The translations under genes were made by a program, and so were the position numbers. A stretch of 64,000 nucleotides of DNA from Macrostomum lignano (lineage: Eukaryota). The notes beneath the pieces are model-generated. The model saw only the letters and a list, made by a program, of their open reading frames with translations. It did not search any database and was not told the DNA's origin. Shown here piece by piece: positions 439 through 51,232 of this stretch (position 1 is the stretch's first letter; every line of letters starts with the position of its first letter). The stretch is taken from assembly GCA_002269645.1 (NCBI GenBank), contig NIVC01001230.1, positions 1-64,000 on the forward strand. The letters run 5' to 3'.

Positions 439-13408
<12,970 letters not shown>

Positions 13409-18804: not shown

Positions 18805-19268
18805 TAGCCTCCTCATCATTCTCGGCCATCGCCATCCTCATCATTCTCGGCCATTGCCCTCCTCATCATTCTCGGCCATTGCCCTCCTCATCATTCTCGG
18901 CCATTGCCCTCCTCATCATTCTCGGCCATTGCCCTCCTCATCATTCTCGGCCATTGCCCTCCTCATCGATCTCGGCCATCGCCCTCCACATCATTCTTGG
19001 CCATCGCCCTCCTCATCATTCTCGGCCATCGCCATCCTCATCATTCTCGGCCATTGCCCTCCTCATCGATCTCGGCCATCGCCCTCCTCATCGATCTCGG
19101 CCATCGCCCTCCTCATCGATCTCGGCCATCGCCCTCCTCATCATTCTCGGCCATCGCCCTCCTAAATCATTCTCGGCCATCGCCCTCCTAAATCATTCTC
19201 GGCCATCGCCCTCCACATCATTTTCGGCCATCGCCCTCCTCATCATTCTCGGCCATCGCCCTCCTCAT
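18805..19268. repeat. 25-bp minisatellite (CCCTCCTCATCATTCTCGGCCATCG)n overlapping the endonuclease IV stop codon and 3' UTR
   Basis: On the minus strand the unit reads GAGGGCGATGGCCGAGAATGATGAG and contains the last codons plus the TGA stop. Confidence 0.93.
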
Positions 19269-21817
19269 CCGGGTCCCGCAGCAGGTCCCGCAGCGCGGCC
19301 AGCTGCAGTCCGTACCGATCGACCCCGGGCGTCTCCAGCACCATGGGCAGCGGGCGGGCCGCGGCCGCAGCCGTGACGGCCGGGTGCCTCAGCAGCAGGC
19401 GGAAGGCCGCGGCGCCCAGCTGCCCGTCGCCGATGTCGGCGTGTCGATCGACCCGAGAGCCGAGGCCGCCGCGGGAGTCGTTGAGGTGAAGGCCGCGGAG
19501 CAGCGGCCGGTGGCCGAGGGCCTCGGCCAGCTCTGCGAAGGCGGCGTCGAGCCCGGCCCGGCAGCGGAGGTCGTAACCGTAGGCGAAGGCGTGGCAGGTG
19601 TCGATGCAGACGCCCAGCCGGCTGTCGGCGTCCGTCGCTGCTGGAAGACGGCCGCGGACGGCGGTCAGAATGTCGCCGAGCTCGGTGAAGCTGCCTCCCA
19701 GACTGCCGCCCTGCGTTTTGGAGTTGGGGATTTTTTTGCTGGATAATGGGAACAGCACGGCCTGGGGAGCCAGGCTAGAAGGGGGCGGACACTCATTCAC
19801 AGGGAACAGGGGAAGGGGGCGGACACTCGTTCACAGGTAACAGGGGAAGGGGGCGGAAACTCATTCACAGGGAACAGGGGAAGGGGGCGGAAACTCATTC
19901 ACAGGGAACAGGGGAAGGGGGCGGAAACTCATTCACAGGGAACAGGGGAAGGGGGCGGACACTCATTCACAGGGAACAGGAGAAGGGGGCGGACACTCAT
20001 TCACAGGGAACAGGGGAAGGGGGCGGACACTTATTCACAGGGAACAGAAGGGGGCGGAAACTCATTCACAGGGAACAGGGGAAGGGGGCGGGAAATCATT
20101 CACAGGGAACAGGGGAAGGGGGCGGAAACTCATTCACAGGGAACAGGGGAAGGGGGCGGAAACTCATTCACAGGGAACATGGGAAGGGGGCGGACACTTA
20201 TTCACAGGGAACAGGAGAAGGGGGCGGAAACTCATTCACAGGGAACAGGGGAAGGGGGCGGGAAATCATTCACAGGTAACAGGGGAAGGGGGCGGACACT
20301 CATTAACAGGGAACAGGGGAAGGGGGCGGACACTCATTAACAGGGAACAGGGGAAGGGGGCGGACACTCATTAACAGGGAACAGGGGAAGGGGCGGACAC
20401 TCATTAACAGGGAACAGGGGAAGGGGGCGGAAACTCATTAACAGGGAACAGGGGAAGGGGGCGGACACTCATTCACAGGGAACAGGGGAATTCCGAACTT
20501 GGGGCTCACCTGTCCTGCCGCGTTCTCCAGCACTAGGCACACGTCGGGCACTGTAGTCAGAGCCTCGGCAAGCGCATCGGCCAGACGCTCAATGGCGACC
20601 GGCCGGTCAGGATTAGCGGCACCAGCTGAGCCGGGGTGAAGATTGTACAGCTGGAGGCCCAGCCTGCGGCACCTGACGGGAATGGGAAATTGGCACTTTA
20701 AAAATTTTAAAACACCCTTTGCTGATGAATAGAAGGAATGTACACTTCTCCAGTGTCCTCTCCATCATTCACGGAGAAGGGGGGGGGGGGTTGGACACTA
20801 CCGAAAATCAAGGCGACCCTCAGCCAGCGTTGAGGCAAGCAGTTATGCCAAAAAGAGTTCGCCTACTCTTGAGTAGCAAGAAAAGAATACATTTGAATAG
20901 TTTAATAGAACTGCAAGCGCGTGTTTGTTCACAGGTAAGGTCCCGGCTCCTCGCGCGTATCGCAGGTTTGAAACTCACATTAAAGCTCAGTTTTTAGGGG
21001 AATCCCTGCTGGTTCTCCAGGGAATCCCTTCTGGTTTTCAAAGGAAATCCGTGCTGGCTCTTCAGGAATTCCTTATGGTTTTTCAAGGGAAATTCCTGCT
21101 GGCTCTTCATGGAATCCCTTCTGGTTTTTCAAGGGAAATTCCTGCTGGCTCTTCATGGAATCCCTACTGGTTTTTCAAGGGAAATCTTTGCTGGTTATCC
21201 AGGGGAAATCATCATCAGCCAGTGCACATGAACACACTGCAATGGACAGAATCGCACAGAGCAAAAATTTCCCGATTTCTACGCATTTCCAACCTGTCCA
21301 TCTCGTCGATCAAAGCCGTCAGACTGCGCCGCCTGACCTCGGCATTGGGAGAGGCACAGTTGATGAGGTAGCTGCCGTGCGGCAGCGCAGCCTCCGGCTT
21401 GAAACCGCTGCTCCGCATCGCCGACTGAAACTCGGCGGCCTCCTCAGGCAGCAGCGGCTTCGACTCCCATCGGCGCTGGTTGCGCACGAATAGCGCCAGG
21501 CTGTCAGCGCCGATTGCGCGCGCGTTAGCGAAGGCGCGGTGCAGGCCGCCGGCCACTGAGACGTGGGCGCCCAGAAGCAGCAGATCCGGCTGCAGTTTCC
21601 GCTGCATCGGAGGTTGCGGAGATGCAGCACTGGCTGCCTGTTGTTTTTGCTTTCTGGCTTTCTTCTTGTCTGGAACAGTCTTCTTTGTGTCTGCTTTTAT
21701 CTGGCGCTTGGCAGCGCTGGGAGCTGCCGCCGCTTGCTGCTGCTTCTCTGAGAGCACTGCTGTAGCAGAGGCGGAAGCAGGTCTTCTGCTTCTGAGACTG
21801 CGCGGTGTCGGCACCAT
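19243..21817 (-). CDS. apn1: AP endonuclease of the endonuclease IV family. Exons: 21817-21294, 20672-20510, 19710-19243 (N-terminus uncertain)
   Basis: [43 protein letters not shown] and VLETP motifs supply all nine Zn ligands known from the Nfo/APN1 family. Basic N-terminal extension (KKKARKQK). GT-AG junctions keep frame. Confidence 0.93.
19786..20490. repeat. 34-bp minisatellite (CACTCATTCACAGGGAACAGGGGAAGGGGGCGGA)n in endonuclease IV intron 2
   Basis: Direct tandem repeat. Confidence 0.95.
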
Positions 21818-22674: not shown

Positions 22675-24145
22675 CTATTTAATGTACTTGTCCATGAACT
22701 TCTTGTGGAATTCCGAGCGCAGCGTGTCGTTAATGAAGCTGGCCGGCCGCTGCCGACCTTCGTCATCGTCGCGGGCGCAGTTTTTAAATACGACGTCGTC
22801 GTTCCAGCGACGCTTCACTTTGAAGTCGCCGCCTCCCGAGCCGCTGGACGAGGCGCCCTGCTTGGACTTGTTAAGCAGCGGGTTGCCCTTGAGAATGTTC
22901 TCCGTGCGGATGCGCTCCTCATCTGCCTGCCGCTCAGCCTCTCTGCAGGGGAAAGGGGGAATTAGGTGACTGGAGAATGGTGAAGGGACTCTAGAAGGGA
23001 AATCCCAGCTGACTCTAGAAGGGAAATCCCAGCTGACTCTAGAAGGGAAATCCCAGCTGACTCTAGAAGGGAAATCCCAGCTGACTCTAGAAGGGAAATC
23101 CCAGCTGACTCTACAAGGGAAATCCCAGCTGACTCTACAAGGGAAATCGCAGCTGACTTTAGAAGGGAAATCCCAGCTGACTCTACAAGGGAAATCCCAG
23201 CTGACTCTAGAAGGGAAATCCCAGCTGACTCTAGAAGGGAAATCCCAGCTGACTCTAGAAGGGAAATCCCAGCTGACTCTACAAGGGAAATCCCAGCTGA
23301 CTCTACAAGGGAAATCCCAGCTGACTCTACAAGGGAATTTCCAGCTGACTCTACAAGGGAAATCCCAGCTGACTCTACAAGGGAAATCCCAGCTGACTCT
23401 ACAAGGGAAATCCCAGCTGACTCTACAAGGGAAATCCCAGCTGACTCTACAAGGGAATTTCCAGCTGACTCTACAAGGGAAATCCCAGCTGACTCTACAA
23501 GGGAAATCCCAGCTGACTCTACAAGGGAAATCCCAGCCGACTCTAGAAGGGAAATCCCAGCTGACTCTAGAAGGGAAATCCCAGCTGACTCTAGAAGGGA
23601 AATCCCAGCTGACTCTAGAAGGGAAATCCCAGCCGACCCTACAAGGACAATGCCCACGGACACTTCAAGACCCACCTGCGCGCGGCCTCCGCCTCCCGCT
23701 CGCGCCGAATCTTGGCCAGCTCGGCCATCAACTCGGCCGCTTCGTCCTCGTCGCCTTCGTCGGCGGAGTCGGCGTCCGAATCCAAGTCGGCGGCGGCCAC
23801 GGCCGCGTCGTCGGCGTCCAGGTTGGCCGGCAGCGCCGCAGCGGAGCCGTCGGTCAGGCGGGCCCGCTTCGACGACGAAGAGGAGGTCGATGGCTCATCG
23901 GCGCTGCTGCCGCCGCCGCCGCCGCCGCGATGTCGGCGCTCGCGGTCCTCCAGGTCGCGCTTGAAGTCGCGGCTGCTGACTCGGGCATCCTCGGCGGTGC
24001 CCTGGCCGTCCTGGCGGTATTTCAGGCGGGTGTGGCTGGGCAGATCGCGCGAGCTGTACTGCTTGGACTGGGCGCTCAGGTCGCGCTCGCGCATGCCCTG
24101 CCCGCCGCGGGCGGTGTCGAATGTCGGCCTGTGAGCTGTGGTCAT
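22675..24145 (-). CDS. CWC15: Spliceosome-associated protein CWC15. Exons: 24145-23676, 22942-22675
   Basis: N-terminus [15 protein letters not shown]...[16 protein letters not shown]; C-terminus NILKGNPLL...[15 protein letters not shown]...[20 protein letters not shown]. Both are hallmark Cwf15/Cwc15 segments. Confidence 0.96.
22985..23642. repeat. 24-bp minisatellite (GGGAAATCCCAGCTGACTCTASAA)n in the CWC15 intron
   Basis: Direct tandem repeat, about 27 copies. Confidence 0.96.
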
Positions 24146-24239
24146 GCCTGCTGCTGCAGCTGTGGGGGGGGGGTCGAATATTCGGTCTCGAAATCTATGG
24201 GGAAATTCTTTGCACTGGCCAACTTTCCTCATTTTAATG

Positions 24240-24830: not shown

Positions 24831-24959
24831 TGTGTGAGTTCTGTTTGGTTAGAGCAGCGAGTCGCTTCTGACATTTGCATTTTATCTTAAGTAATGCAGA
24901 TTGTTCGAATGGATTTTACCTTGGATACTGCTGGATATGATATTTTTGTCGCATATTAA

Positions 24960-25480
24960 CTGGGATTTCCCTGGGATACCGAAAGGGGAATCCTTCCTGT
25001 ATAGCAACTAGGATTTCCCTTGGATACCGAAAGGGGAATCCTTTCTGTATAGCAACTAGGATTTCCCTTGGATACCGAAAGGGAAATCCTTTCTGTATAG
25101 CAACTAGGATTTCCCTTGGATACCGAAAGGGGAATCCTTTCTGTATAGCAACTAGGATTTCCCTTGGATACCGAAAGGGGAATCCTTTCTGTATAGCAAC
25201 TGGGATTTCCCTTGGATACCGATGGGTGATTTCTTTTGCATAGCAACTGAGACCCCTTAGATACCGAAAGGGGAATCCTGTCTACATAGCAACTGGGATT
25301 TCCCTTGGATGCCGATAGGAGAATCCTTTCCACATAGCAACTGGGATTTCCCTTGGATGCCGATAGGCGAATCCTTTCCACATAGCAACTGGGATTTCCC
25401 TTGGATGCCGATAGGAGAATTCTTTCCACATAGCAACTAGGATTTCACTTGGATACCAAAAGGGGAATCCTTTCCACATA
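24960..25480. repeat. 48-bp minisatellite (GGGATTTCCCTTGGATACCGAAAGGGGAATCCTTTCTGTATAGCAACT)n between the SelT stop codon and the SECIS
   Basis: Direct tandem repeat, about 11 copies. Confidence 0.93.
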
Positions 25481-36750: not shown

Positions 36751-37924
36751 ATGAAAGACAAGCTGAGGGGCCAGCTAGACCCCATTGTGCGCAAACGGAT
36801 AGGAAAAATTCTTGCTTATTTACTTCGATATGGTGCTGCCAAAGAGGGTCTTGCAGTTAACGACGGGGACTTTGTAGATCTCGACGAGCTTCTTGAGTGC
36901 AGTTTACTTAAAGGATACGCACAAGAATTGTTGAAGTCAGTAATAACAGAAGATGTCTCCTTTCGAGGGGTGAAACGATTTGAAATAAAGCAGGATGCTT
37001 TAAATGGTCAGCAATTCGTTCGAGCTACGTTTGGACGGCGGCTTGAAGAGGTAAGTATCACTTCGGTCTTAAAGATGCCATTCATAGATATTTTCAGCTA
37101 AATGACAACAATTAACAGTTCAAGTTAGATTTAAACGTAAAACTACTTCCTTCCTTTTTAGAAGCCATTTCATGACAATTCAAGAGTAAAAAAACTTGGA
37201 GAAATATGCCTGGATGCCATTGCCATGAACATTAAGCAATACGACTTCTCCGATTTCAATGACGACTATCTGATAAGGTAAGCAAAAGTTGCTACACAAT
37301 AAATATGGACAAACAGAGTCGAATTATTATGCAAAGCATGAAAAACTTTTGTTCTCCCGCAGCCAACTCATACAGCGGCTTCGCAGTAAAAAGATGCTCA
37401 ACAATCAAACTCTGGATTGCATACTGTCCTCTTCACTTGAAATCCTGGACCTCGAAGGCTGCTACCTGACACCGAAGTCGCTCGCCATCGTTCGCACCCG
37501 ATGCCCCGGCCTGCGTATCCTGAATCTACGTCGCCATGGCTACCTAATGACCGACTCCAACCTGAGATCGCTGCTGCAGGGCCTCCCCCAGCTGGAGACG
37601 CTGAATCTCACCTGCTGTCACAACCTCACCGGCCGCAGCCTGGAGTCGATCCGCACAGTCTGCCCGCACCTGCGACACCTCAACCTTTTCGGTGTGCCCC
37701 GCATCAGCGACGAAGCCCTGCTGCAGTTTCTCTGCCTGGCCGAGAGTCTGTCCTACCTCGACATCTTCGATCGCAAGTTCGAATCCAGCCTCTATCTTGA
37801 GACAGCGACTGAGACCGCTCGGCAGCGCGGCATCGTGCTACTCCACAGGGACGTCAAGGACCCGGAGGTGTGTCCGAGGAGGGCGCTGACTGCTCACCTG
37901 GGCGCTCGGGGTCGATTTTGGTGA
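36751..37924 (+). CDS. Uncharacterised 325-aa protein: Tpt1/KptA-like N-terminal lobe + BC-box-like motif + leucine-rich repeats. Exons: 36751-37050, 37162-37277, 37363-37924
   Basis: IGKILAYLLRYGAAKEGL...DFVDLDELL...VKRF...VRATFG resembles the TRPT1/KptA N-lobe (LSKALSYALRHGA.K.GL...GFV...KQRF...IRANQGH). It is followed by KLGEICLDAI and RNI/AMN1-type LRRs (LEILDLEGC, LRILNL, LETLNLTCC, LRHLNL, LSYLDI). Splices keep frame. Confidence 0.85.
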
Positions 37925-38751
37925 CAGATCAACAGCTGCAATTCATGCAGTCCCGACTGCTCCAAACCTCTTCAAATGCATCTAATTTTTAACAGCTTTG
38001 TACTCTGAACTTTCATGTAACATATTGCCTTGTGAGATTTTGATTCAAAATTTAACATGACGTAACAATGGATTATCCAGCTCCTATTCAGCGCGATTGC
38101 CTACGCAACTTATGCGCCGTTACTAATTACCGCTTGGCTGTCGGAATTGATCTGTAATGCTTATTTAGAATGTGTTTTGCAATAAATCATTTAACTTCGC
38201 CAATACATTCAAGCAGAAGCAATGTGACGTGCTTTTGTACAGTTTATGCATGCATGCGATTGCTCATGGAAGTAATTGCGTCACTATAACACTCGTAGCA
38301 CGTTCATTAAATGCTCAAAGCGAATGCTCAGATCGACATTAGAGGGATTTCTTCCAGGTCATGGTTACATGATCCTCACGTGATGCGAGATCAGCTATTT
38401 AAACTGCTTGAATTGGCAAATCTGACAGAGTATAGGTCATGAAGCCACGCAGTTGTTCAAGTCATGTTATTCAGTATACTAAATCTGTGATATGCGATAC
38501 AATTTATATAATAGCAGCGGCACGTACCAGACGCACGCATTTGCCGAAAGCTGATTCAACCTTCGAACTGTCTGAGAGTGCTGGCAGATGGCCTCTTGAG
38601 TCGATTATTTTAGCGAACAAAAAAGCCTCTCGATAGGCCGATTGTCCGCTTATCCATTGCTACGGACTAAAGTTTCTCCAGATACTATTTGGGCTTCATA
38701 AGCCAGGAGCAGAAAGGACTTCCTACAGAAAAGTAGCACAAAAGTCAGGAA

Positions 38752-41598
38752 ATGTTGCGGCCGTTGATTCTTGCGCTGCTCCCGGCGCTACTGCTGGCAT
38801 CGTCGGCTGGTCGCGCCGGCAGGCGGGAGAGCTGCTCCAGTCACACCGACTGCGCCAAGTGCGCCACCAGCCAGTCCTGGCTGGGCACCTCCTGCCGATG
38901 GTGCCCCATCGACCTGGCCTGCCACGAGCCCGGCTCCCTCGTCAACAAATGCTCGTCCTCGCAGGTACGGGGGCAGTTCCCTATCCTTACCTAGCCTTTT
39001 GGCAGGTTCAGTCTAACGCGTCTACAAGCTAAATCTTGCGACAAAGTACCGGGTTCGATTCCGTGAGGGGCCGCATTAATTTAGGGCTCGTGCACAGATA
39101 TATTGGCCGCAAGGGGCTTGTCGTCCGATTGGCGCCCTGGAGGACTGATGATGGTAAGAAAGGGTCGCTGTAAGCCTTTGCGCTAACCTTTACAACCAAA
39201 GCGTCTTATAAGTTACATGAGTAATTCTTATTGCTCGATATGGACAACAAAAGCTTTAAAAAAACTTCCCAAAACGAATTGTCTTCCTTGCACTTCAGAG
39301 CTTTTTTTAAATACTTTGAATACTTTTTTGTATTCACGAAGAGATGGAATTTGCCATGAAATTAAGGATTCACACCCAGATACAGTCGACAAGTCAAGCC
39401 TTCCGATGGATATTATATTATGGATACCAAACGAACTAAATGATAAAATCTAGCTCATAATCAAGCTTTATGAGCTTTATGCTAGTTTTGACCTCTCAAA
39501 CTCTATAACTGAGTTTTAAATTACAAGCGTAAGGCGCTTCAATAAGTAATTAAGTTCCATTATGCACAGGAGGTCCTGGACCCCGGCAAGTGCCACGAGC
39601 CGGACAACGGCCACTACGAGTTCGACGCCCGGCTGAGCGAGCTGGCCGCCGCCATCTCGGGCGCTGCCTACGCTCCGGAGCCGGCGCCCTGTCTGGCGAA
39701 CTTCCCGCCGGCGGCGCAGGCAGGTGGAGGCCGTCTAGTTGACGTCGTCAAAGGCGTGGCAGCCTGCGACATGCTGCACGACGAGTGCTCCGGCTTTGTT
39801 GGTGAGTTCTCTAGCTAGATTTGCTGGCTTTGCTCCGAAATAATGTCTCTTTCTCACGGAGGACATGTAAGTAGAGCAAAGACAAAGAATTACTGTTGCA
39901 TGCTTCTGTAATGCTACATCTAAGCCGAAAAGCAAAGTTTTTGATTCTGTTCTACCAACAGCAACAATCAGTCATACAGTATGCATGACAGACAGGCTGC
40001 GGCTCTCTATCACTGCGTCTTCTGTGACGCCGTTCCGCAAATGTCGGAGAGACATCACGCCAGTTCAGACACCCCCTGAGCGGGAAGTCATCAAAAATGC
40101 AGACTTAGCCACCTGTCGTGACGTCGGCGACTCCAGCAGGTAGGTTGCAGAATCTTGTCAAGTCCTGCTGGTCACAGCTGATAAAAGAGTTGCAGCTGCT
40201 GACGCCAGAACTTCAGATTCTGACGTTCGATCCCAAGTCTTGAGGCGCACCCTGTGACGCTTTTCCTACTCTGTTTTGCTGCTGTTTGTTTTCAAGTTCG
40301 AGTTTGCTGGGCAAAACCCCCATACAGACTTAAAGAAGTCATTGATAAAGAGAAACAAAAATAAAAGTTCCAAAACCTAAACCACAGGCCGCCTGCCGGA
40401 CCGCAAGCTGATCGTGCTCGCCTTTCGTGGCACCACCGGCAGCAGCCAACTGCTGGTTGAGGGCCTCATGGGCCTCGCCATGCCCAAGGAGGCCTTCCCG
40501 ATCGGCGGCAAAGTACAGGCGTACTTTAGCAACGGATTCAAAGCGCTCTGGCCGCAGCTTCACGAGCCGACACTGGCGCTGATGCGGGCCAACCCTGACC
40601 ACAGCCTGTTGGTCACCGGACACTCACTCGGAGGCGCGATGGCGGCCCTCGCAGCAGCCAGTCTGGCCGCCATTGATGGCGTGACGCCCGGCCGTCTGGT
40701 CTTCTACTCGTTCGGCGAGCCAAGAGTTGGTGACTATTTCTTTGCCAGGGCATTCGACAGGCTGGTGCCCAACAGCTGGCGAGTAGTGCACGGAAATGTG
40801 AGACTATTGGAAATCTTGCTCAATGAGGAACTGCTCAGATGGCCAAGTGCTCTCAATGAGGAATTGATCAGATGGCCAAGTGCTGTCAATGAGGAGTTGC
40901 TCAGATGGCCAAGTGCTGTCAATGAGGCATTGCTCAGATGGCCAAGTGCTCTCAATGAGGAATTGATCAGTTGGCCAAGTGCTCTCAATGAGGAGTTGCT
41001 CAGATGGCCAAGTGCTCTCAATGAGGAATTGATCAGATGGCCAAGTGCTCTCAATGAGGAGTTGCTCAGATGGCCAAGTGCTCTCAATGAGGCATTGCTC
41101 AGATGGCCAAGTGCTCTCAATGAGGCATTGCTCAGATGGCCAAATGCTCTCAATATGAGGCATTTCCTCAGCTAGTCTAATAAGAAACCGTGATTCCAAG
41201 ATAAAAAATGTGCTCAAACTCTCCAGGACCTCATCGTGCACCTGCCAATCTGCTCGCCGGTGATGCTGTCGAGCCGCGGCGTCTCCCGTCTGGTTGCGCC
41301 CTTCAGCTGCTCCGGGCACCTCGGCTTCCCCTACCATCACGGCACCGAGGTCTTCTTTGCGAGAACTGCCGACATGCTGCCCGGCAGCGGCGGCCACCGC
41401 ATCTGCACCGGCACGCCGATTAACGAGGACAGCAGCTGCGCCAACTCCTCGGACAACTGGCGGTCCTGCCTGAGCCCTTCAAACCTGATGGCCTGCGTGG
41501 AGGCGCACAAGAATTACTACGGAATTCACCTGGGCGGCTGGTGGAAGGAGAACCAGTGCACCGGGCTCTCTTTCAACAATGACAATACGCGTCTCTGA
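38752..41598 (+). CDS. Secreted class-3 (fungal-type) lipase with an N-terminal Cys-rich PSI-like module. Exons: 38752-38964, 39570-39801, 40388-40797, 41227-41598
   Basis: Signal peptide; C..H..C..C...C.WC...C...C module; AFRGT, VTGHSLGG (Ser), FGEPRVG, DLIVHLP (Asp), YHHGTEV and HKNYYG (His). Confidence 0.92.
40820..41155. repeat. 33-bp minisatellite (AATGAGGAATTGCTCAGATGGCCAAGTGCTCTC)n in lipase intron 3
   Basis: Direct tandem repeat. Confidence 0.93.
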
Positions 41599-44849: not shown

Positions 44850-46762
44850 TCACGAGACTCGCACGGGCGCTATCTCGAATATTGTCGATAGCTGATTGCG
44901 CAACAGCTGCACCTCCGTTGCTAGGCGGTTCGGCGCGCAGCGCAGCACCCAATCGCGCGCCTCCGCTAGCAGAGCGGCACGGGCCGAACCCGGCGGCATC
45001 GGCCAAGCCAGCAGCGTCAGGAGGGCCAGCGAGCCGTCCGCACCGCCGCAGCCGTTGTCGCCTTCAAGCTGGACATCCGCGGCCACGCCTGCGGCGGCTG
45101 CGCTTTGCCTCAGGCCGGCGAGGAAGGCGTCGCCGACCGGGCCGAGCGCCGGCAGCGAGCGCAGCGCCGCCAGCACAGCCTCGGCATCCGCGTCCGCCGC
45201 GGCCTGACGCTGCCGACTGAGAACGGCCTCGGCCAACCGGTGGCGGCCGCACAGCCGGCCCAGCTGCCCGGCCGCCTGCGACAGGGCCGCGATAGCGTCA
45301 CTCATCTCTCTGATCTGATTGGCTGGCGCACCCACCTCAACCTCCGCGGCCAGCCAGTCCTCAAAGTCGCGCGCCAGCCGCAGCAGCGGCGAGTCCGGCT
45401 GCCGGACGCCAGTGGCGAATCGCTGCGAGACGCGGAAGGCGGTGAGGCCCGGGGCCTTGGCCAGCACGCAGTAGCCGCGCGGCCGTCCAGTGGCCGAGTC
45501 TGGCAGCTTCAACGCATCCCAGAGCTGGCGCAGCGGCACCCAATGCGACGGATACTTGAACCGGGCCGTGTCGAATATGAGCACGAGCTGCCTGTCCGGG
45601 TGGAAGCCACCGATCGGGGCGAAGTGGCCGTCCCCGGTCTGGCCGAGCGCTCGCCGGCTGTAGCTGGCCACCAGGATGCAGCCGTCCGTGCGGCTGCAGT
45701 CGCGAACGGTCGCTTCGAATTCGGCGAGGCCGGCGGCGTCGGCTTGAGGATCGGCGTCGAAGGCGGGATGCACCAGGCGGCGCACCTGGAGCGAATTGCA
45801 GCCAGCCAGGCAGGCAAATTCAGCCAGGGTCAGGCCGTGCTTGCGGACCCGGTCCACCTGTGGGCGCAAGTCAAGTATTTTCGCATATTTTACTTATATT
45901 TCTACTCTAAGTAGCTGAACAAAAAAAATTAATACTATTTTTACATTTCTACTAACAGTAGGGTCATTAGTATATGCATTTTTTAATTACTGAACAACGC
46001 AAAATTACAAGCACAATAGCAAGTCCCGTGGGGGGACAAGGAGGTCACAGGGATAAGTTGCCCTGCCAAATCCTGTGGGGGGACAAGGGGATCACGGGGA
46101 ATAGTTGACCCTGCTATATCCTGTGGGGGGACAAGGAGGTCACGGGGATTAGTTGACCCTGCTATATCCTGTGGGGGGACAAAGAGGTCAGGGGGATTAG
46201 AAGAGCCTGCTATATCCTGTGGGAGGGACAAGGGGTCACGGGGATTAGAAGACCCTGCTATATCCTGTGGGGAACAAGGGGGTCAGCTGACCCTCCCCAG
46301 GGAAAACCGTGGATCTGGGTTCCTTCCCGACTGTTTGTCCTGCCTCACCTGCACGCAGCAGTCCAGCATCTCTTCGTGAAACCATCGCCAGGGACCTTTC
46401 CAAACTTTTCCAGGATCCACCTCCAGGCTATTGAGGCACATCACCAGCGTTGCCAGGCCGCAGAATGACGGATCGTCCTGGGTTCGATACTGCGAAGCCA
46501 GGGAAAAATAGCCTTCCATGAAGCCGGCCTCAAGGGCCTCGCGGAATACTTGCTTGCCCTCGGGGCTGCCGAATGCCACGCAGTTGGCTGGCAGGGCTCG
46601 CCTGTAGAACTGCACGGCCGCTGGCTGCAGTGGGGCCGGGCTGGCAGGGGAGGCCCCGCCAGAGGCTGCTGTTGCTGAGTTGCCAGCAAAGCGATTCAAT
46701 AGCCGAGGCAGAGCTGCGGCTGGATTTGGGCGAATGCATCGCAGCAGCAGACAGTGAAGCAT
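44850..46762 (-). CDS. PCS1: Phytochelatin synthase, about 473 aa. Exons: 46762-46349, 45857-44850
   Basis: [27 protein letters not shown] (catalytic Cys), [22 protein letters not shown] (His), [15 protein letters not shown] (Asp). One GT-AG intron. Confidence 0.96.
46020..46290. repeat. ~48-bp minisatellite in the PCS intron
   Basis: Repeats of GGGGGACAAGGAGGTCACGGGGATTAGTTGACCCTGCTATATCCTGTG. Confidence 0.88.
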
Positions 46763-47699
46763 TCTGGTCAGTGAGGTGGCTTGCTGTTTGCATGCGTACA
46801 CCAGCTGTCATAGGATTGTTGCCTGAATATGCTTTAGCTAAATACTCCACTGCAATATATGAAATTGAAGATGGTTGATTATTGTTTATAAATTTAGATT
46901 TGAATAGTCTCTTTTGTGCTTATTATTCTTTACAAAATTATTTTAGCTTAAGCCCAGATACTAATAGAAGTGATGCAAATTCACTTAACCAAGAGGAATT
47001 AATTAGTCTAAGCTCACCTTCATGGACAACTGAAGTTACGTTATATATAGGACGCGACACTCAGCTTTCATGGAAATTTTTTTGGAGGCCCGTAAGCCAT
47101 ATAAAGTTCTACGTACATAAGCCTAGGATTCGACTGCTACAAATAGAGCACAGGACTGTGTGTGTTGTAATAAACCATTCAGGTTTTCGTTTCTTACTAA
47201 ACTTGATAAGCTGACTTCACCTACTAATTAAAACAATTATACCACGTTCCCTTAATGGCCAATAACAATATGCATTTTTTAATTTGGATTTGTGAAATAC
47301 TGGTTTTCTTGTTTTCTTTTTTGCTGACAAACAATGTTTCTTTATATCACAAATGGCAACAAGAGACCATGTTTACAAAGCAAATTTTTAATACTTTTCA
47401 TAGCTGTAGGTTGCAAATACCATTGCATCTAAAAGTAAATTTTGTGTTCTGAAAAATAACATATAGAACATCAAATTTGATATGAAAAAACGGTCTAGGA
47501 ATCTTCCATCATGAAAGCTTGGCTTGTTTATAGTTGACTGGGTATGGTCTCCTATTATATTCTAATACAAGTCAAGAAAATAGTGCCAATTTTTTCAAAG
47601 TCACTTTCTTGCCTTTTTGGGTTTCTCAAATTTTTAGGCCTACACTCTAGAAATTGACATTAAAATGGAAGCCTTATTTCTATGTATTTCTATGTCATG

Positions 47700-48282: not shown

Positions 48283-51232
48283 ATGACTCGTAAATGTTGT
48301 ATTCCTGGCTGTTTTTCAAACTATAAAAGTGGAGAAAAAGCAACAGTCTATCGATTTCCATCAAACAGTGAGGAACATGGCAAATGGCTTGCTGCACTTC
48401 CCACTCAAGTAAAGGTAGCTGAGTTTAAAAGTGTGAACTACTTTGGTCCTATCTATATTATGCAATATGATAGACAGAAAATGCTATAATATTTCAATGA
48501 CATTATATCATTCCAGAATGTCACCAAACACATGGGAATATGCAAAAAGCATTGGCCAAAGGATGCAAGGCTTACAAAAGTCAAGCAATATTTTCGACAT
48601 ATTGACCCACCATCTGTCTTTATGTGCCCACCTAGTTCTATGCGGCAAACATTTGCAGGTACATTTTTGCAAAAGTTCTTTAAATAATGCTTTCAATGCT
48701 TTTTTAATGCTTTTTTAAGTCAGCGCTGTCACTCAATTGCATTATTTCAGTGTCATCTAGAAATGTGACTGAACATTGTATTCTGGCCTCACATCGTCAA
48801 CAAATGCCTGATGAACTACAGGACTTTAATATCCAGGATAGAATTGGAGGCTGGGAGAACTTTGTATCTGCTGTGGCAGATGACAAGCTAGCCTGGATGT
48901 CCAGTTGGTTGGTCCAACGCGAGGAGGGTTGCTTTACTTTTCTTAAAGTTCTGTCTCGCGTTGTCGAATGTTCCATCACTGTTACTGTTCAATTCCATGT
49001 CACTGCATACCGACGAAACACACCTGTTCATGTTGCCAATTTACTTGGCTTTCAAAGTCACTTAGAACATTACAGTCAATTGGAGGCTGTCGCAAATCGT
49101 GTCAGACAAGCTAATGTCTCATTAAAAAACGAAGTCTCTGCTCATGTAGAAGAACTAAGAACTGCATGTCTGGAATCTGGTAGCGGACATCAGGGTCAAT
49201 ATTTCCTACTTCACCAGCTGGAGTTAAGCACTATTCTTTCATCTGGTGTACGGTATACATCCGAGGATATCCTGATCGCAGCACGACTGTACTTCTCCAG
49301 GAAAAACGCATACTGTACGCTACGAAACATTGCATCACTGCCTCATCCAGTTACACTAAAGCGCTATCTTGGAGGTCTAGGCATGGTTGGAAGTACTACC
49401 GACTGTAAGCTTGTTGTTCAGGCGCATTTTGCTGAAGCGACTCCGTTGCAGAAACTGTGTTCAATTGTTTTCGATGAAGTTTATGTTCTGCCATCCATCA
49501 GGCTGCGTGGATATTGTGGGTTACGCTGAAGACAACCCTACAGAACTGGCGCGCACTATTCTTGCTATATTGATCAAGCCAGTCATGGGTGCCGCAGCAT
49601 TTGTCGCTCGCCTTGTTCCTATATATAGCCTGAAGCCAGCCTTTCTTTATCAGGTGGTTCTAACAACAATATCTATAGTTCACAAATGTGGCAGCAAAGT
49701 TTTGAGTCTAATTTGTGATAATCACTTCACCAATCGCAGCTGCTTCAATCTATTTCATCCTGATCCAGCCTCTCCATGGAAGGCCATTAATCCATTTGAT
49801 CAGACACAGCCATTATTTCTACTCTACGATACAGTTCATATTTTAAAGAATTTATTCACAATATTTATTCGCAATAATTGGCTTACTCAGGCGTTTGGAG
49901 AGATCGAATTCTGTTCAGCGTCCGGGCTGTCGGCACAATGTGCTAAATAGAGCCATATTTCCAGCTTAGAGAAAAAGTGTCGCAAACATATCATTCGCAC
50001 CACCAATCTGAGCTCTGTAGCCTGCAATCTAATGCCACTGGGACGGCAAAAGGTGTCTTTAGTCCTAGAAGTATTCAACGATAAAATCGCTTGCGCTCTG
50101 TGAGTCTGTGACTACAGTGACACGGCAGATTTCATCAACCAAGTTGTAGATTTCTGGAAGATTGTAAACGTAAAATCACCAGAAGCACATATTATTTCCA
50201 ACGACATTCGGAGAGCACCCATCTCATCTTTGGACTCTGTCAGCTTGAACATCCTTTTGAATTTCGCCTCGATGGTCAACCAAATGAAGGGTGGATGTGG
50301 TCTATCACGCCCTCAGTCACTGACCACGGACACCCAAAAGGCTGTGGTTCAAACTTCTCAAGGCTTAGTGGAACTTTCCAAATTTCTTCTGGCTCAACAC
50401 TCATTCAAGTATGTTCTTCTAGGTAAGTTGATTAATCTTTTTTATTTCCAAATGACGACGCTTATGACTCCTCATAGAATTAATCATATTATTTTGTTAT
50501 TGTTCATTTATATTACTCAACCATCCCTACTTACTCAGGTGAGTTTCAATCGGATCGACTCAAAAGCGAATTCTCCATATACAGGCAAGGGCACAGTGGA
50601 TGCTACTTCATTTCAGTAGAGGAAATATTAATCAGTGCAAAGCTACGCAGGATGCAATTATACTCCTAGCTCAAAGATAAAGCTCCGGAACACCCGCGAG
50701 CAGCTTGTTGCGATGGTGAGCTGTCAGACGACGAACTCGCACATCTCGATGATCTAGTTTCGACTTTGACAGACAGCGCTGAATCCTCCATACCCACTGA
50801 TGAAGAACAGTTGGCACTGTACTATATATGCGGATATGTAGCTCGCAAGGAGCAGATCCCAGTTTCAGAAGACAGTGGCCAAGCTGATTCAATTCTCCAA
50901 TTCAGTTGCCCGCTGATTGTGAGTTCACGCATTTACTATCGAGAGGCAAGCTGCGCGAGCCTCCAGAGTGGCTCCTGGTTTTTGCCGCACTGTGCTACCG
51001 ACTGTTCTCATCACTGCAACTGTGTTGCTCAACTCAATTGGCTTGGATGTTTGTGTTTGTTTTTGATTCTGTCATGGATGTCGAAGTGCCTATCAACAAT
51101 GTACAAGGAATATCTAGGCGATTGGCAAACATTTTTCTAAAAGGACTAGTACGGAGAGAATCAGCCATCTGTTGTGATGCTCCAAATCCTCAAAATCGTA
51201 GGCTGCGAAAGCTACGTCCAGTCTTGTACTAG
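48283..51232 (+). pseudogene. THAP9/P-element-like transposase, spliced, disrupted
   Basis: THAP finger (KCCIPGC...RFP...KW...ICKKHW), IVFDEVY, LICDN, LYDTVHILKN, LALYYICGYVARK. Frameshift near 49510 and an in-frame TAG at 49948-49950. Confidence 0.88.

What the first reader, a model, noticed from the sequence alone, without database searches (positions are those of the whole stretch)
36751..37924. Tpt1/KptA RNA-binding lobe fused to a BC-box-like motif and LRRs: candidate pseudo-enzyme ubiquitin-ligase adaptor
Seen: a clean 3-exon, 325-aa ORF. Exon 1 aligns by eye with the N-lobe of tRNA 2'-phosphotransferase, but the RH motif reads RY, the GHS motif reads GRR, and the NAD-binding C-lobe is absent. 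Exon 2 carries KLGEICLDAI (LxxxCxxxI) and exon 3 about five RNI/AMN1-type LRRs. Established: the Tpt1 N-lobe binds phosphorylated RNA ends, and LxxxCxxx[AILV] plus LRRs is the layout of Elongin BC/cullin adaptors such as ZYG11/ZER1 and PRAME. Inference: a catalytically dead RNA-phosphate sensor linked to a cullin-RING ligase. I do not recognise this architecture from any characterised protein.
Basis: partly seen in the sequence, partly recalled or inferred. Interest (0 to 1): 0.8.

Follow-up and report, generated by a model that had tools for sequence, protein, structure and literature searches.

The report
Tpt1 RNA-lobe fused to AMN1-like LRR
This flatworm gene belongs to an old, unstudied protein family that joins the RNA-binding half of an RNA-repair enzyme, without its catalytic half, to a leucine-rich-repeat module resembling the target-picking subunit of a ubiquitin ligase, which hints at an untested link between chemical marks on RNA ends and protein degradation.

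Summary
The window is Macrostomum lignano NIVC01001230.1. The 3-exon, 325-aa model has canonical splice sites, is identical to NCBI protein BOX15_Mlig021724g1, and both introns keep position and phase in the annelid Capitella.

- **Residues 15-99:** the RNA lobe of Tpt1/TRPT1. Pfam PF01885 scores above its cut-off and the family profile hits TRPT1 structures at 1e-13. RH reads RY, GHS reads GRR, and there is no NAD+ lobe.
- **Residues 106-290:** align with vertebrate AMN1 from AMN1's residue 5 (hhalign 99.4%, E 7e-22).
- **LxxxC helix:** aligns with the Rad7 SOCS-box residues L168/C172. Rad7 is solved in complex with Elc1, which the Rad7 paper read here calls Elongin C.

An expert E3 compendium records a "clear BC/Cul box" and ELOB capture for human AMN1.

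The same fusion occurs in about 24 sequence clusters from Amoebozoa and Capsaspora to amphioxus. Two non-animal members also carry a NADAR domain. I found no vertebrate, arthropod or characterised member.

The bare motif occurs by chance in 43% of shuffles. Yeast Amn1 is reported to use Skp1/Cul1.

Cullin-adaptor and RNA-phosphate-sensor functions are plausible but unproven.

The parts
36751..37050 (+). Exon 1, aa 1-100: Tpt1/TRPT1 RNA lobe (winged helix), ending in the degenerate GHS position (GRR)
   Evidence: PF01885 on residues 15-99, 32.5 bits against cut-off 26. Family profile against TRPT1 structures, 1e-13. Foldseek TRPT1 matches.
36826..36831 (+). Codons R26-Y27: the RH motif of the catalytic tetrad reads RY
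   Evidence: Aligns with R35-H36 of mouse TRPT1. In the family, Arg is kept in 22/23, Tyr in 17/23 and His in 5/23.
36976..36978 (+). Codon R76: equivalent of the third tetrad arginine (Cth R68, Mm R81)
   Evidence: Aligns with the KQRF arginine of TRPT1. At least 90% conserved in the family. Its role in clamping the 2'-phosphate is from PMC6333775.
37033..37041 (+). Codons G95-R96-R97: GHS position reads GRR
   Evidence: alignment. The middle residue is Arg in 18/23 family members, and GHS is kept in only 3/23.
37051..37161 (+). Intron 1 (phase 0, gtaagt..ag), exactly at the boundary between the Tpt1 lobe and the AMN1-like module
   Evidence: Same alignment position and phase in Capitella (ER|NV) and Capsaspora (SL|EN).
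37162..37277 (+). Exon 2, aa 101-139 (the last codon is split): conserved linker (PFHDNSRV) and BC-box-like helix
   Evidence: AlphaFold2 helix 108-122, with low-confidence linker 95-110. hhalign to the AMN1 N-terminus.
37195..37221 (+). L112-x3-C116-x3-I120: BC-box-like core
   Evidence: L112 is invariant in 16/16 and position 116 is C/S/A/T/G. L112 and C116 align with Rad7 L168/C172.
37278..37362 (+). Intron 2 (phase 2, gtaagc..cag)
   Evidence: Same position and phase in Capitella (AA|T).
37363..37924 (+). Exon 3, aa 139-325 plus stop: second and third helices of the box, LRRs, C-terminal tail
   Evidence: Family residues 106-290 align with AMN1 5-219, probability 99.4%, E 7e-22.
37430..37843 (+). 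aa 162-299: five cysteine-containing-type LRRs plus a capping strand
   Evidence: Model strands. FBXL2 1e-13. LRR_4/LRR_6.
37844..37921 (+). C-terminal tail ending in GRFW
   Evidence: The ending G-[KRQ]-[FIV]-W is shared with Capitella, Dreissena, Liolophura and P0022. AMN1 ends in VTWTVY.
37868..37869 (+). Alternative donor GAG|gt inside exon 3, used by the fused UniProt model
   Evidence: P0170 reads ..RDVKDPE|EMLRPL... The matching acceptor cag| lies at 38748/38749.

Best explanation
The gene is real. It encodes a member of an ancient, uncharacterised eukaryotic family built from two known parts.

Part 1 (about aa 10-100) is the RNA lobe, a winged helix, of tRNA 2'-phosphotransferase TRPT1/Tpt1. 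The NAD+ lobe is gone, so the protein cannot transfer phosphate or ADP-ribose. The two arginines that clamp the RNA 2'-phosphate in Tpt1 (R26, R76) and the Lys of the SK motif (K19) are kept. The tetrad His is a conserved Tyr.

Part 2 (about aa 106-325), joined by a flexible but conserved linker, is an AMN1-type module. It has a BC-box-like helix (V109..L112..C116..I120), two further helices, five LRRs and a Trp-ending tail.

Most likely mechanism: the helix docks on Elongin C, so the protein acts as a substrate receptor of an Elongin B/C-cullin-RING ligase. The winged-helix lobe recognises a phosphate-bearing nucleic-acid feature (an RNA 2'-phosphate or 5'-phosphate end, or an ADP-ribose-phosphate adduct). 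This would bring the ligase, or in the NADAR-bearing non-animal members a hydrolase, to such RNA or to the proteins on it.

Shown here: the gene structure, both homologies, the loss of catalysis, and conservation across phyla. Inferred: Elongin C and cullin binding, nucleic-acid binding, and any ubiquitylation.
For: Gene model and its validation:
- establish the model.
- Both introns are conserved in position and phase in Capitella, and intron 1 also in Capsaspora.
- A Trinity transcript from Soliformovum, and 1.1-2.6 kb contigs from other samples, carry uninterrupted full-length members.

Tpt1 lobe:
- establish the homology.
- R26, R76 and R91-A92 are at least 90% conserved. The lobe is as conserved as the rest of the protein (mean column identity 49% against 48%).
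- The roles of these residues come from PMC6333775 and PMC10415124.

AMN1 relationship:
- The helix region aligns with AMN1 residues 5-71 at probability 96%, E 3.4e-9.
- The full-length comparison gives probability 99.4%, E 7e-22. The AMN1 sequences were retrieved and named by their sources.

Elongin link:
- The combined family plus AMN1 profile has Rad7, solved in complex with Elc1, as its top PDB hit at E 0.0024.
- L112 and C116 align with Rad7 L168 and C172, the residues mutated to make the SOCS-box mutant strain, which fails to ubiquitinate Rad4.

Against an F-box:
- No F-box Pfam hit in 16/16 members.
- hhalign to the verified SKP2 and FBXL2 F-box regions gives probability below 1%.

Link to NAD/ADP-ribose nucleic-acid chemistry:
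- NADAR is fused at the C-terminus in Capsaspora CAOG_08465 and in P0038, and both keep RH and GHS.
Against: - No interaction or binding data exist for any family member.
- The Rad7 match is weak (21 bits) and the ZYG11B match is not significant.
- No member hits the Pfam SOCS_box model.
- The residue before L112 is K/R in most members, not the S/T/P/A of the textbook BC box.
- The M. lignano protein lacks the Pro of the Cul-box-like FPDE motif (FNDD).
- The LxxxCxxx[AILV] pattern occurs by chance in 43% of shuffles.
- Yeast Amn1 co-precipitates with Skp1 and Cdc53 (PMC6181423).
- E3-ome rates human AMN1 'assessed, inconclusive; needs experimental validation'.
- In the lobe, three of the six RNA-contact positions of Tpt1 have changed (S->G18, H->Y27, K->V74). 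In TRPT1 the H->A mutant is inactive. Phosphate or RNA binding may therefore be lost or retargeted.
Confidence: 0.42

Rival explanations
1. Same architecture, but the helix region is a degenerate F-box. The protein would then be a receptor of an SCF (Skp1-Cul1) ligase, as reported for yeast Amn1.
For: - Yeast Amn1 binds Skp1 and Cdc53, and Ace2 is stabilised in skp1 and cdc53 mutants (PMC6181423).
- The best Foldseek matches of the whole model are Skp1-bound F-box LRR proteins: FBXL17, FBXL2, SKP2 and MAX2 at E 1e-6 to 1e-5.
- Automatic names such as 'F-box/LRR-repeat protein 7-like' and 'F-box protein SKP2B-like' are attached to orthologues.
Against: - No F-box or F-box-like Pfam hit in 16/16 members.
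- hhalign of the helix region to the verified SKP2 and FBXL2 F-box regions gives probability below 1%.
- The family lacks the LP..E[IL]L and the W-containing third-helix motifs.
- The only solved protein that matches the helix region is Rad7, bound to Elc1 (Elongin C), not a Skp1 partner.
- The Foldseek hits are driven by the LRR solenoid.
Confidence: 0.13
2. Not a ligase subunit at all. The protein would be a non-catalytic RNA- or ADP-ribose-binding scaffold. The helices merely cap the LRR solenoid, and the LRRs hold a partner protein, for example an enzyme of RNA-end or ADP-ribose processing. The NADAR-fused non-animal members would then be targeted hydrolases, and the animal proteins their NADAR-less regulators or competitors of canonical TRPT1.
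For: - NADAR fusions occur in Capsaspora and P0038, with RH and GHS retained.
- The two phosphate-clamping arginines are conserved.
- The BC-box evidence is indirect and the motif alone is at chance level.
- The Cul-box Pro is absent in M. lignano.
- Human AMN1 itself is unvalidated as an E3 receptor.
Against: - L112 is invariant, position 116 is always a small residue, and V109 is nearly invariant in the family and invariant in the 22-sequence family plus AMN1 alignment. This fits a conserved docking helix better than a simple cap.
- L112 and C116 align with the functional Rad7 SOCS-box residues.
- ELOB was captured with human AMN1.
Confidence: 0.3
3. The winged-helix lobe no longer binds nucleic acid. 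It has become a protein-binding domain or an autoregulatory lid for the LRR receptor.
For: - The tetrad His is replaced by Tyr in 17/23 members, and the GHS His by Arg in 18/23 as fixed states.
- The S and K contact positions are changed in M. lignano.
- Winged helices are versatile interaction domains (general knowledge).
Against: - R26, R76 and K19, the residues that contact the phosphates in Tpt1, are the ones retained.
- The changes introduce Tyr and Arg, both common phosphate ligands (inference).
- The model's low-confidence segment 95-110 separates the lobe from the rest, so the two are probably flexibly linked rather than packed together.
Confidence: 0.25
4. Annotation artefact: exon 1 belongs to a decayed TRPT1 pseudogene that lies by chance upstream of an LRR gene, or the true product is the 716-aa fusion with the downstream lipase.
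For: - UniProt holds a 716-aa model (A0A1I8J8S8) that joins this gene to the Lipase_3 gene.
- No RNA-seq could be consulted here.
Against: - The same fusion is collinear in about 24 clusters from many phyla.
- Intron positions and phases are conserved.
- Transcript-derived sequences exist for other species.
- The open frame is intact in two M. lignano copies that differ by one synonymous base.
- The C-terminal G-x-[FIV]-W ending, which the lipase fusion would delete, is conserved.
- NCBI annotates the lipase separately, with its own Met and signal peptide.
Confidence: 0.02

Closest known systems
Vertebrate 'protein AMN1 homolog' (human AMN1, 258 aa)
   Same: Family residues 106-290 align with AMN1 5-219 (hhalign probability 99.4%, E 7e-22). 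The helix region alone gives 96%, E 3.4e-9. Shared features:
- V-x2-L-x3-C helix
- P-containing second helix
- L-x-P-x-L-x2-LDL entry into the first LRR
- cysteine-containing LRRs
- a Trp-containing C-terminal tail
   Different: AMN1 starts at the helix and has no Tpt1 lobe. Identity is only about 21-26%. It has more LRRs. Intron positions are not shared with the ray AMN1 gene. AMN1 itself is functionally unvalidated in animals.
Tpt1 / KptA / TRPT1 RNA 2'-phosphotransferase (PF01885)
   Same: The RNA lobe (winged helix) is homologous and closest to the eukaryotic TRPT1s (1e-13). The Arg of RH, the Arg of K-x-R-F and the Lys of S-K are retained.
   Different: There is no NAD+ lobe: no H-H-V triad, no fourth tetrad Arg and no SGR donor loop. 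His is replaced by Tyr, and GHS by GRR. It cannot be an enzyme of this family, so the UniRef name '2'-phosphotransferase' is a misnomer.
Yeast Rad7 (SOCS-box LRR subunit of the Rad7-Rad16-Elc1-Cul3 ligase; PDB 5zb2 with Elc1)
   Same: It is the only solved protein matched by the helix region. It is the top hit of the family plus AMN1 profile (E 0.0024), in two collinear pieces. L112 and C116 fall on Rad7 L168 and C172. Its LRR solenoid is also found by Foldseek (4e-4).
   Different: The sequence match is weak. Rad7 has a long unrelated N-terminal region and no Tpt1 lobe. It works in DNA repair together with Rad16.
ZYG11B / ZER1 / PRAME
   Same: The layout looks the same by eye: an L-x3-C/A helix, a [FL]P-x-E helix, then LRRs. 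The ZYG11B-EloB-EloC structure 9lk2 appears in the Foldseek list (6e-4).
   Different: The profile comparison with verified ZYG11B 1-130 is not significant (E 0.013, probability 1.6%). PRAME, taken from a recalled and unverified sequence, gave no match. ZER1 was not compared. ZYG11B continues into ARM repeats.
FBXL2 / SKP2 / FBXL17 (F-box LRR receptors of SCF ligases)
   Same: Best LRR similarity by sequence (FBXL2 1e-13) and by fold.
   Different: No F-box: 0/16 Pfam hits, and hhalign to the SKP2 and FBXL2 F-box regions gives probability below 1%.
Capsaspora owczarzaki CAOG_08465 and metagenomic P0038 (Tpt1 lobe + LRR + NADAR)
   Same: Same family and same order of domains. The phase-0 intron at the lobe boundary is the same in Capsaspora.
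   Different: They carry a C-terminal NADAR domain (best E 1.3e-29 among the members) and keep the RH and GHS motifs. The M. lignano protein has neither.

Membership tests
Tpt1/KptA/TRPT1 RNA 2'-phosphotransferases | N-terminal RNA lobe (winged helix) homologous to PF01885 | tested here: met
   PF01885 at 32.5 bits against cut-off 26, residues 15-99. All 16 aligned members hit it, best 2.3e-14. Profile against TRPT1 structures 1e-13. Foldseek finds 7yw2/7yw3.
Tpt1/KptA/TRPT1 RNA 2'-phosphotransferases | C-terminal NAD+ lobe (ADP-ribosyltransferase fold with the H-H-V triad) | tested here: not met
   The Pfam match stops at profile position 84 of 177. Residues 106-290 are AMN1-like instead. The triad positions are taken from PMC10415124.
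Tpt1/KptA/TRPT1 RNA 2'-phosphotransferases | Catalytic tetrad Arg-His-Arg-Arg | tested here: not met
   R26 is present, His is replaced by Y27, R76 is present, and the fourth Arg (in the NAD+ lobe) is absent.
AMN1-homolog type LRR proteins | N-terminal helix region (V-x2-L-x3-C ... P-containing helix ... L-x-P-x-L-x2-LDL) continuous with cysteine-containing LRRs | tested here: met
   hhalign A3 against the AMN1 alignment gives probability 96%, E 3.4e-9. A2 against AMN1 gives 99.4%, E 7e-22. Combined alignment.
AMN1-homolog type LRR proteins | Protein begins at the helix region, with no other domain | tested here: not met
   A 100-aa Tpt1 lobe precedes it. Intron positions differ from those of a vertebrate AMN1 gene.
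BC-box / Cul-box (VHL- or SOCS-box) receptors of Elongin B/C-cullin ligases | BC box [STPA]-L-x3-C-x3-[AILV] on an exposed helix | tested here: inconclusive
   The core L112-x3-C116-x3-I120 is present and holds in 16/16 members (Cys in 11, otherwise S/A/T/G). It aligns with Rad7 L168/C172. However, the first position is K/R, the motif alone is at chance level, and there is no Pfam SOCS_box hit.
BC-box / Cul-box (VHL- or SOCS-box) receptors of Elongin B/C-cullin ligases | Cul2 or Cul5 box downstream of the BC box | tested here: inconclusive
   The family consensus F-P-D-E-[YF]-L-[IV] resembles a Cul2 box (recalled consensus). M. lignano reads F-N-D-D-Y-L-I, without the Pro. For AMN1 the experts could not tell Cul2 from Cul5.
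BC-box / Cul-box (VHL- or SOCS-box) receptors of Elongin B/C-cullin ligases | Physical binding to Elongin C/B and a cullin | not testable with these tools
   No multimer prediction with Elongin B/C was possible here, and there are no experimental data for any family member. The only evidence is indirect: ELOB capture for human AMN1.
F-box proteins (SCF receptors) | F-box domain (PF00646/PF12937) | tested here: not met
   No hit at E <= 0.1 in 16/16 members. hhalign to the verified SKP2 and FBXL2 F-box regions gives probability 0.7% and 0.07%.
F-box proteins (SCF receptors) | Binding to Skp1 | not testable with these tools
   Reported only for the distant yeast Amn1 (PMC6181423).

The most novel reading that the evidence does not exclude
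The family is a ubiquitin-ligase receptor that reads a chemical mark on nucleic acid rather than a peptide degron. The mark would be an RNA 2'-phosphate, a phosphorylated end or an ADP-ribosyl-phosphate adduct, read through a catalytically dead Tpt1 lobe. The receptor would direct ubiquitylation of proteins sitting on such RNA, or of the adduct itself. The ancestral form, still seen in Capsaspora, would have carried its own eraser domain (NADAR).
Probability: 0.12. Interest if true: 0.85.

Novelty: new variant of a known kind. Interest (0 to 1): 0.6.

Why it matters
Tpt1/TRPT1 is conserved in animals that do not need it for tRNA splicing, and its physiological role there is still open. A paralogue that keeps only the RNA-phosphate-recognising lobe is a ready-made reader domain for the same ligand. 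Here that lobe is wired to a probable cullin-RING receptor module, and in unicellular relatives also to a NADAR hydrolase of ADP-ribosylated nucleic acids.

If the inference holds, three things follow:
- It would be the first receptor coupling an RNA-end or ADP-ribose mark to ubiquitylation.
- It would give AMN1-type proteins, so far orphan candidate E3 receptors, an informative relative.
- It would correct a systematic misannotation, since these proteins are auto-named '2'-phosphotransferase' or 'F-box protein'.

The family is absent, as far as seen, from vertebrates, flies and C. elegans. That may explain why it has escaped study. It is present in tractable organisms: Macrostomum, Hydractinia, Branchiostoma and Capsaspora.

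Tried and rejected
1. **F-box reading.** No Pfam F-box hit in 16/16 members. hhalign to the SKP2 and FBXL2 F-box regions, whose sequences were verified against PDB, gave probability below 1%.

2. **ZYG11B and PRAME as closest relatives.** The ZYG11B profile match is not significant. PRAME, taken from a recalled sequence, gave nothing.

3. **Single-sequence PDB search with the helix region.** Only noise. The family-only profile gave Rad7 at E 0.12. Rad7 reached 0.0024 only with the combined family plus AMN1 profile.

4. **Word-indexed search with the 16-sequence alignment.** LRR words saturated it, and it returned only 8 hits.

5. **Pfam scan of long LRR proteins that match from profile position ~105 onward.** Only generic LRR domains, so uninformative.

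6. **My recalled human AMN1 sequence.** It was not exact (257 aa, not in the collection). I replaced it with retrieved AMN1 homologues.

7. **Vertebrate AMN1 as this family minus exon 1.** The intron positions of a ray AMN1 gene do not match, so the idea gains no support and is not excluded either.

8. **The 716-aa UniProt fusion with the lipase.** Rejected as read-through.

9. **Literature.** Searches with Tpt1/KptA/leucine-rich-repeat, NADAR/Capsaspora and Pfam-identifier terms listed no paper on this architecture, judged from titles and abstracts, and the gene identifier returned no paper.

10. **Divergence between the two M. lignano copies as a measure of selection.** There is 1 synonymous difference in 1174 bp against 3.2% in the flanks. 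The introns are identical too, so this shows homogenisation or recent duplication, not dN/dS.
Full report
**What is in the sequence**

The window is the first 64 kb of Macrostomum lignano contig NIVC01001230.1. Between 36751 and 37924 on the + strand, three exons (36751-37050, 37162-37277, 37363-37924) are joined by GT..AG introns. Together they give a 978-nt frame and a 325-aa product. That product is identical over its full length to the NCBI protein BOX15_Mlig021724g1.

A second copy on contig NIVC01001227.1 encodes the same protein. It differs by one synonymous base in 1174 bp, while the flanks differ by 3.2%.

No RNA-seq was available, so I tested the model by comparison with other species:
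- Intron 1 is phase 0 and lies between ..GRRLEE and KPFHDN.. in Macrostomum. It lies between ..GRRMER and NVIHKD.. in Capitella, and between ..GHSISL and ENLPP.. in Capsaspora. This is the same alignment column and phase in all three.
- Intron 2 splits the codon after ..DYLI (AG|C) in Macrostomum and the aligned codon after ..EFLV (AA|T) in Capitella.
- A Trinity transcript from the amoebozoan Soliformovum, and many 1.1-2.6 kb contigs, carry uninterrupted full-length relatives.

The exon 1-2 join is therefore secure.

**The N-terminal domain**

Pfam PF01885 matches residues 15-99 to the first 84 of 177 profile positions, above the curated cut-off. A profile of this domain from 22 family members hits mouse, yeast and human TRPT1 at about 1e-13, and all 13 matches below E 0.01 are Tpt1/KptA structures. 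The AlphaFold2 model (mean pLDDT 79.9) also finds TRPT1 by fold.

I mapped the residues onto mouse TRPT1 and the Clostridium thermocellum enzyme:

| Tpt1/TRPT1 residue | Role in Tpt1/TRPT1 | State in this protein |
|---|---|---|
| Mm R35 / Cth R18 | clamps the 2'- and 3'-phosphates | kept as R26 |
| Mm R81 / Cth R68 | clamps the phosphate | kept as R76 |
| Lys of the SK motif | RNA contact | kept as K19 |
| tetrad His | contacts the junction 3'-phosphate (Cth H19); H36A abolishes activity (mouse TRPT1) | replaced by Y27 |
| GHS motif | not checked here | reads GRR |
| Cth S10 | RNA contact | G18 |
| Cth K66 | RNA contact | V74 |

Nothing corresponds to the NAD+ lobe, which holds the H-H-V triad, the fourth arginine and the SGR loop. 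The protein therefore cannot be a phosphotransferase or an ADP-ribosyltransferase.

Across 23 family members the changes are fixed states rather than decay:
- The first Arg is kept in 22.
- The tetrad position is Tyr in 17 and His in 5.
- The GHS centre is Arg in 18.
- R76 is kept in 21.

The lobe is as conserved as the rest of the protein.

**The C-terminal two-thirds**

The model shows a low-confidence linker (95-110) whose sequence is nevertheless conserved ([NS]P[FY]H[DE]G[TS]KV). It is followed by helices 108-122, 135-147 and 153-159, then six short strands at about 26-residue spacing. These form five cysteine-containing LRRs plus a cap.

By sequence and fold the LRRs resemble FBXL2, SKP2 and FBXL17. 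No member has a detectable F-box. The helix region does not align with the F-box regions of SKP2 or FBXL2, whose sequences I verified against PDB.

It does align with the very N-terminus of vertebrate AMN1. The helix region gives probability 96%, E 3.4e-9. The whole module, family 106-290 against AMN1 5-219, gives 99.4%, E 7e-22.

**Is the helix a BC box?**

On its own the pattern L-x3-C-x3-[AILV] means little here. It occurs twice in the protein and in 43% of shuffles. Three other observations give it weight:
- L112 is invariant, V109 is nearly invariant, position 116 is Cys or a small residue, and position 120 is I/L/V in all 16 aligned members. V and L stay invariant when AMN1 is added.
- A combined family plus AMN1 profile has yeast Rad7 as its top PDB hit (E 0.0024). 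Rad7 is solved in complex with Elc1; the Rad7 paper read here describes the ligase as containing Elongin C. The match is in two collinear pieces. L112 and C116 fall on Rad7 L168 and C172, the residues mutated to make the SOCS-box mutant strain, which fails to ubiquitinate Rad4.
- The supplement of the 2026 E3-ome compendium lists human AMN1 with the expert comment that AlphaFold shows "a clear BC/Cul box", and with ELOB affinity-capture MS. It is rated inconclusive and in need of validation.

Several points count against it:
- The Rad7 score is low.
PRAME gave no match, but only from a recalled sequence.
- The residue before L112 is basic rather than S/T/P/A.
- The M. lignano protein lacks the proline of the FPDE motif that could be a Cul box.
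- Yeast Amn1 is reported to work through Skp1 and Cdc53.

**Distribution**

An exhaustive HMM search found about 24 clusters (at 50% identity) that match both the lobe and the LRR module. Source names place them as follows:

| Group | Taxa |
|---|---|
| Amoebozoa | Soliformovum |
| Filasterea | Capsaspora |
| Cnidaria | Rhopilema, Hydractinia |
| Platyhelminthes | Macrostomum |
| Annelida | Capitella, Dimorphilus |
| Mollusca | Dreissena, Sinanodonta, Liolophura, Lottia, Elysia, Plakobranchus, Lymnaea |
| Nematoda | Soboliphyme |
| Echinodermata | Patiria, Apostichopus |
| Hemichordata | Saccoglossus |
| Cephalochordata | Branchiostoma |

No vertebrate or arthropod member appeared. All are 'uncharacterized', or carry automatic names such as '2'-phosphotransferase', 'F-box/LRR-repeat protein 7-like' or 'F-box protein SKP2B-like'.

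Capsaspora CAOG_08465 and a metagenomic relative add a C-terminal NADAR domain and keep the RH and GHS motifs. [quoted passage not shown] This ties the ancestral protein to NAD/ADP-ribose chemistry on nucleic acids.

Literature searches with Tpt1/KptA/LRR, NADAR/Capsaspora and Pfam-identifier terms listed no paper on this architecture, judged from titles and abstracts, and the gene identifier returned no paper.

**Most likely mechanism and its rivals**

I rate a cullin-RING receptor function through an Elongin C-type docking helix as the single most likely reading, at about 0.4. In this reading the dead Tpt1 lobe acts as a reader of a phosphate-bearing nucleic-acid feature.

The rivals are:
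- the same function through Skp1 (about 0.13)
- a non-ligase RNA/ADP-ribose-binding scaffold (about 0.3)
- a lobe that has lost nucleic-acid binding (about 0.25, compatible with either ligase reading)
- annotation artefact (about 0.02)

The 716-aa UniProt model that runs on into the downstream lipase uses a donor inside exon 3 (37868/37869) and an acceptor 3 nt before the lipase ATG (38748/38749). It would delete the conserved G-x-[FIV]-W ending, so I treat it as read-through.

**Verdict**

The family already exists in databases but is uncharacterised and misnamed. The combination of a Tpt1 RNA lobe without its NAD+ lobe and an AMN1-type candidate receptor module is a new variant of known kinds. 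The decisive experiments are Elongin B/C against Skp1 binding, and phosphate or ADP-ribose-dependent RNA binding by the lobe.

Noticed in passing
window 38749-41400 (+): A Lipase_3 gene with its own Met and signal peptide starts 825 bp after the stop codon. A UniProt model (A0A1I8J8S8, 716 aa) fuses the two genes through donor 37868/37869 and acceptor 38748/38749, 3 nt before the lipase ATG. This looks like read-through, or use of a trans-splice acceptor in cis.
   Followed up: partly
L002 (NIVC01001227.1:48520-61693, reversed): A second M. lignano copy of the gene plus the lipase neighbour. The gene region, introns included, differs at 1 of 1174 bases, against 3.2% divergence in the flanks. 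This suggests recent homogenisation between the duplicated regions.
   Followed up: partly
L004 (Capsaspora KE346360.1) 5001-6964; P0038: The non-animal family members carry a C-terminal NADAR domain and keep the RH and GHS motifs. The animal members have lost NADAR and fixed RY and G-R-x.
   Followed up: partly
window 37844-37921; AMN1 alignment A5: A conserved C-terminal ending, G-[KRQ]-[FIV]-W, is found in several family members, and VTWTVY in AMN1. It may be a structural cap or a functional tail. Its role is unexplained.
   Followed up: no
window 3893-7955 (+): Long ORFs with gag (zinc knuckle), protease, reverse transcriptase, RNase H and integrase features of a Ty3/gypsy-type retrotransposon. 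This was judged by eye from the translations only.
   Followed up: no
window 19243-19800 and 21215-21817 (-): Two exons of an AP_endonuc_2 (endonuclease IV-like) gene, PF01261 at 5e-16 and 3e-10.
   Followed up: partly
window 23639-24232 (-): Cwf15/Cwc15 splicing-factor homologue (PF04889, 8e-35). The same neighbour lies upstream of the second gene copy (L002).
   Followed up: partly
window 44850-45869 and 46283-46801 (-): Two exons of a phytochelatin synthase gene (PF05023, 2e-39 and 2e-35).
   Followed up: partly
window 805-1718, 2133-2646, 22962-23675, 24956-25429, 40800-41150: Several minisatellites that read as long peptide-repeat ORFs in several frames. One (NEELLRWPSAL-type units) lies inside the lipase locus.
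   Followed up: no
window 48750-49950 (+): Two overlapping ORFs of 259 and 187 aa. The first gave no Pfam hit and the second was not scanned. By eye they resemble a transposase-derived gene. Not identified.
   Followed up: no
P0005 (Branchiostoma hybrid, 487 aa): A family member with three to four tandem copies of the segment around the second helix and first LRR. This is either an assembly or annotation artefact, or a real internal duplication.
   Followed up: no
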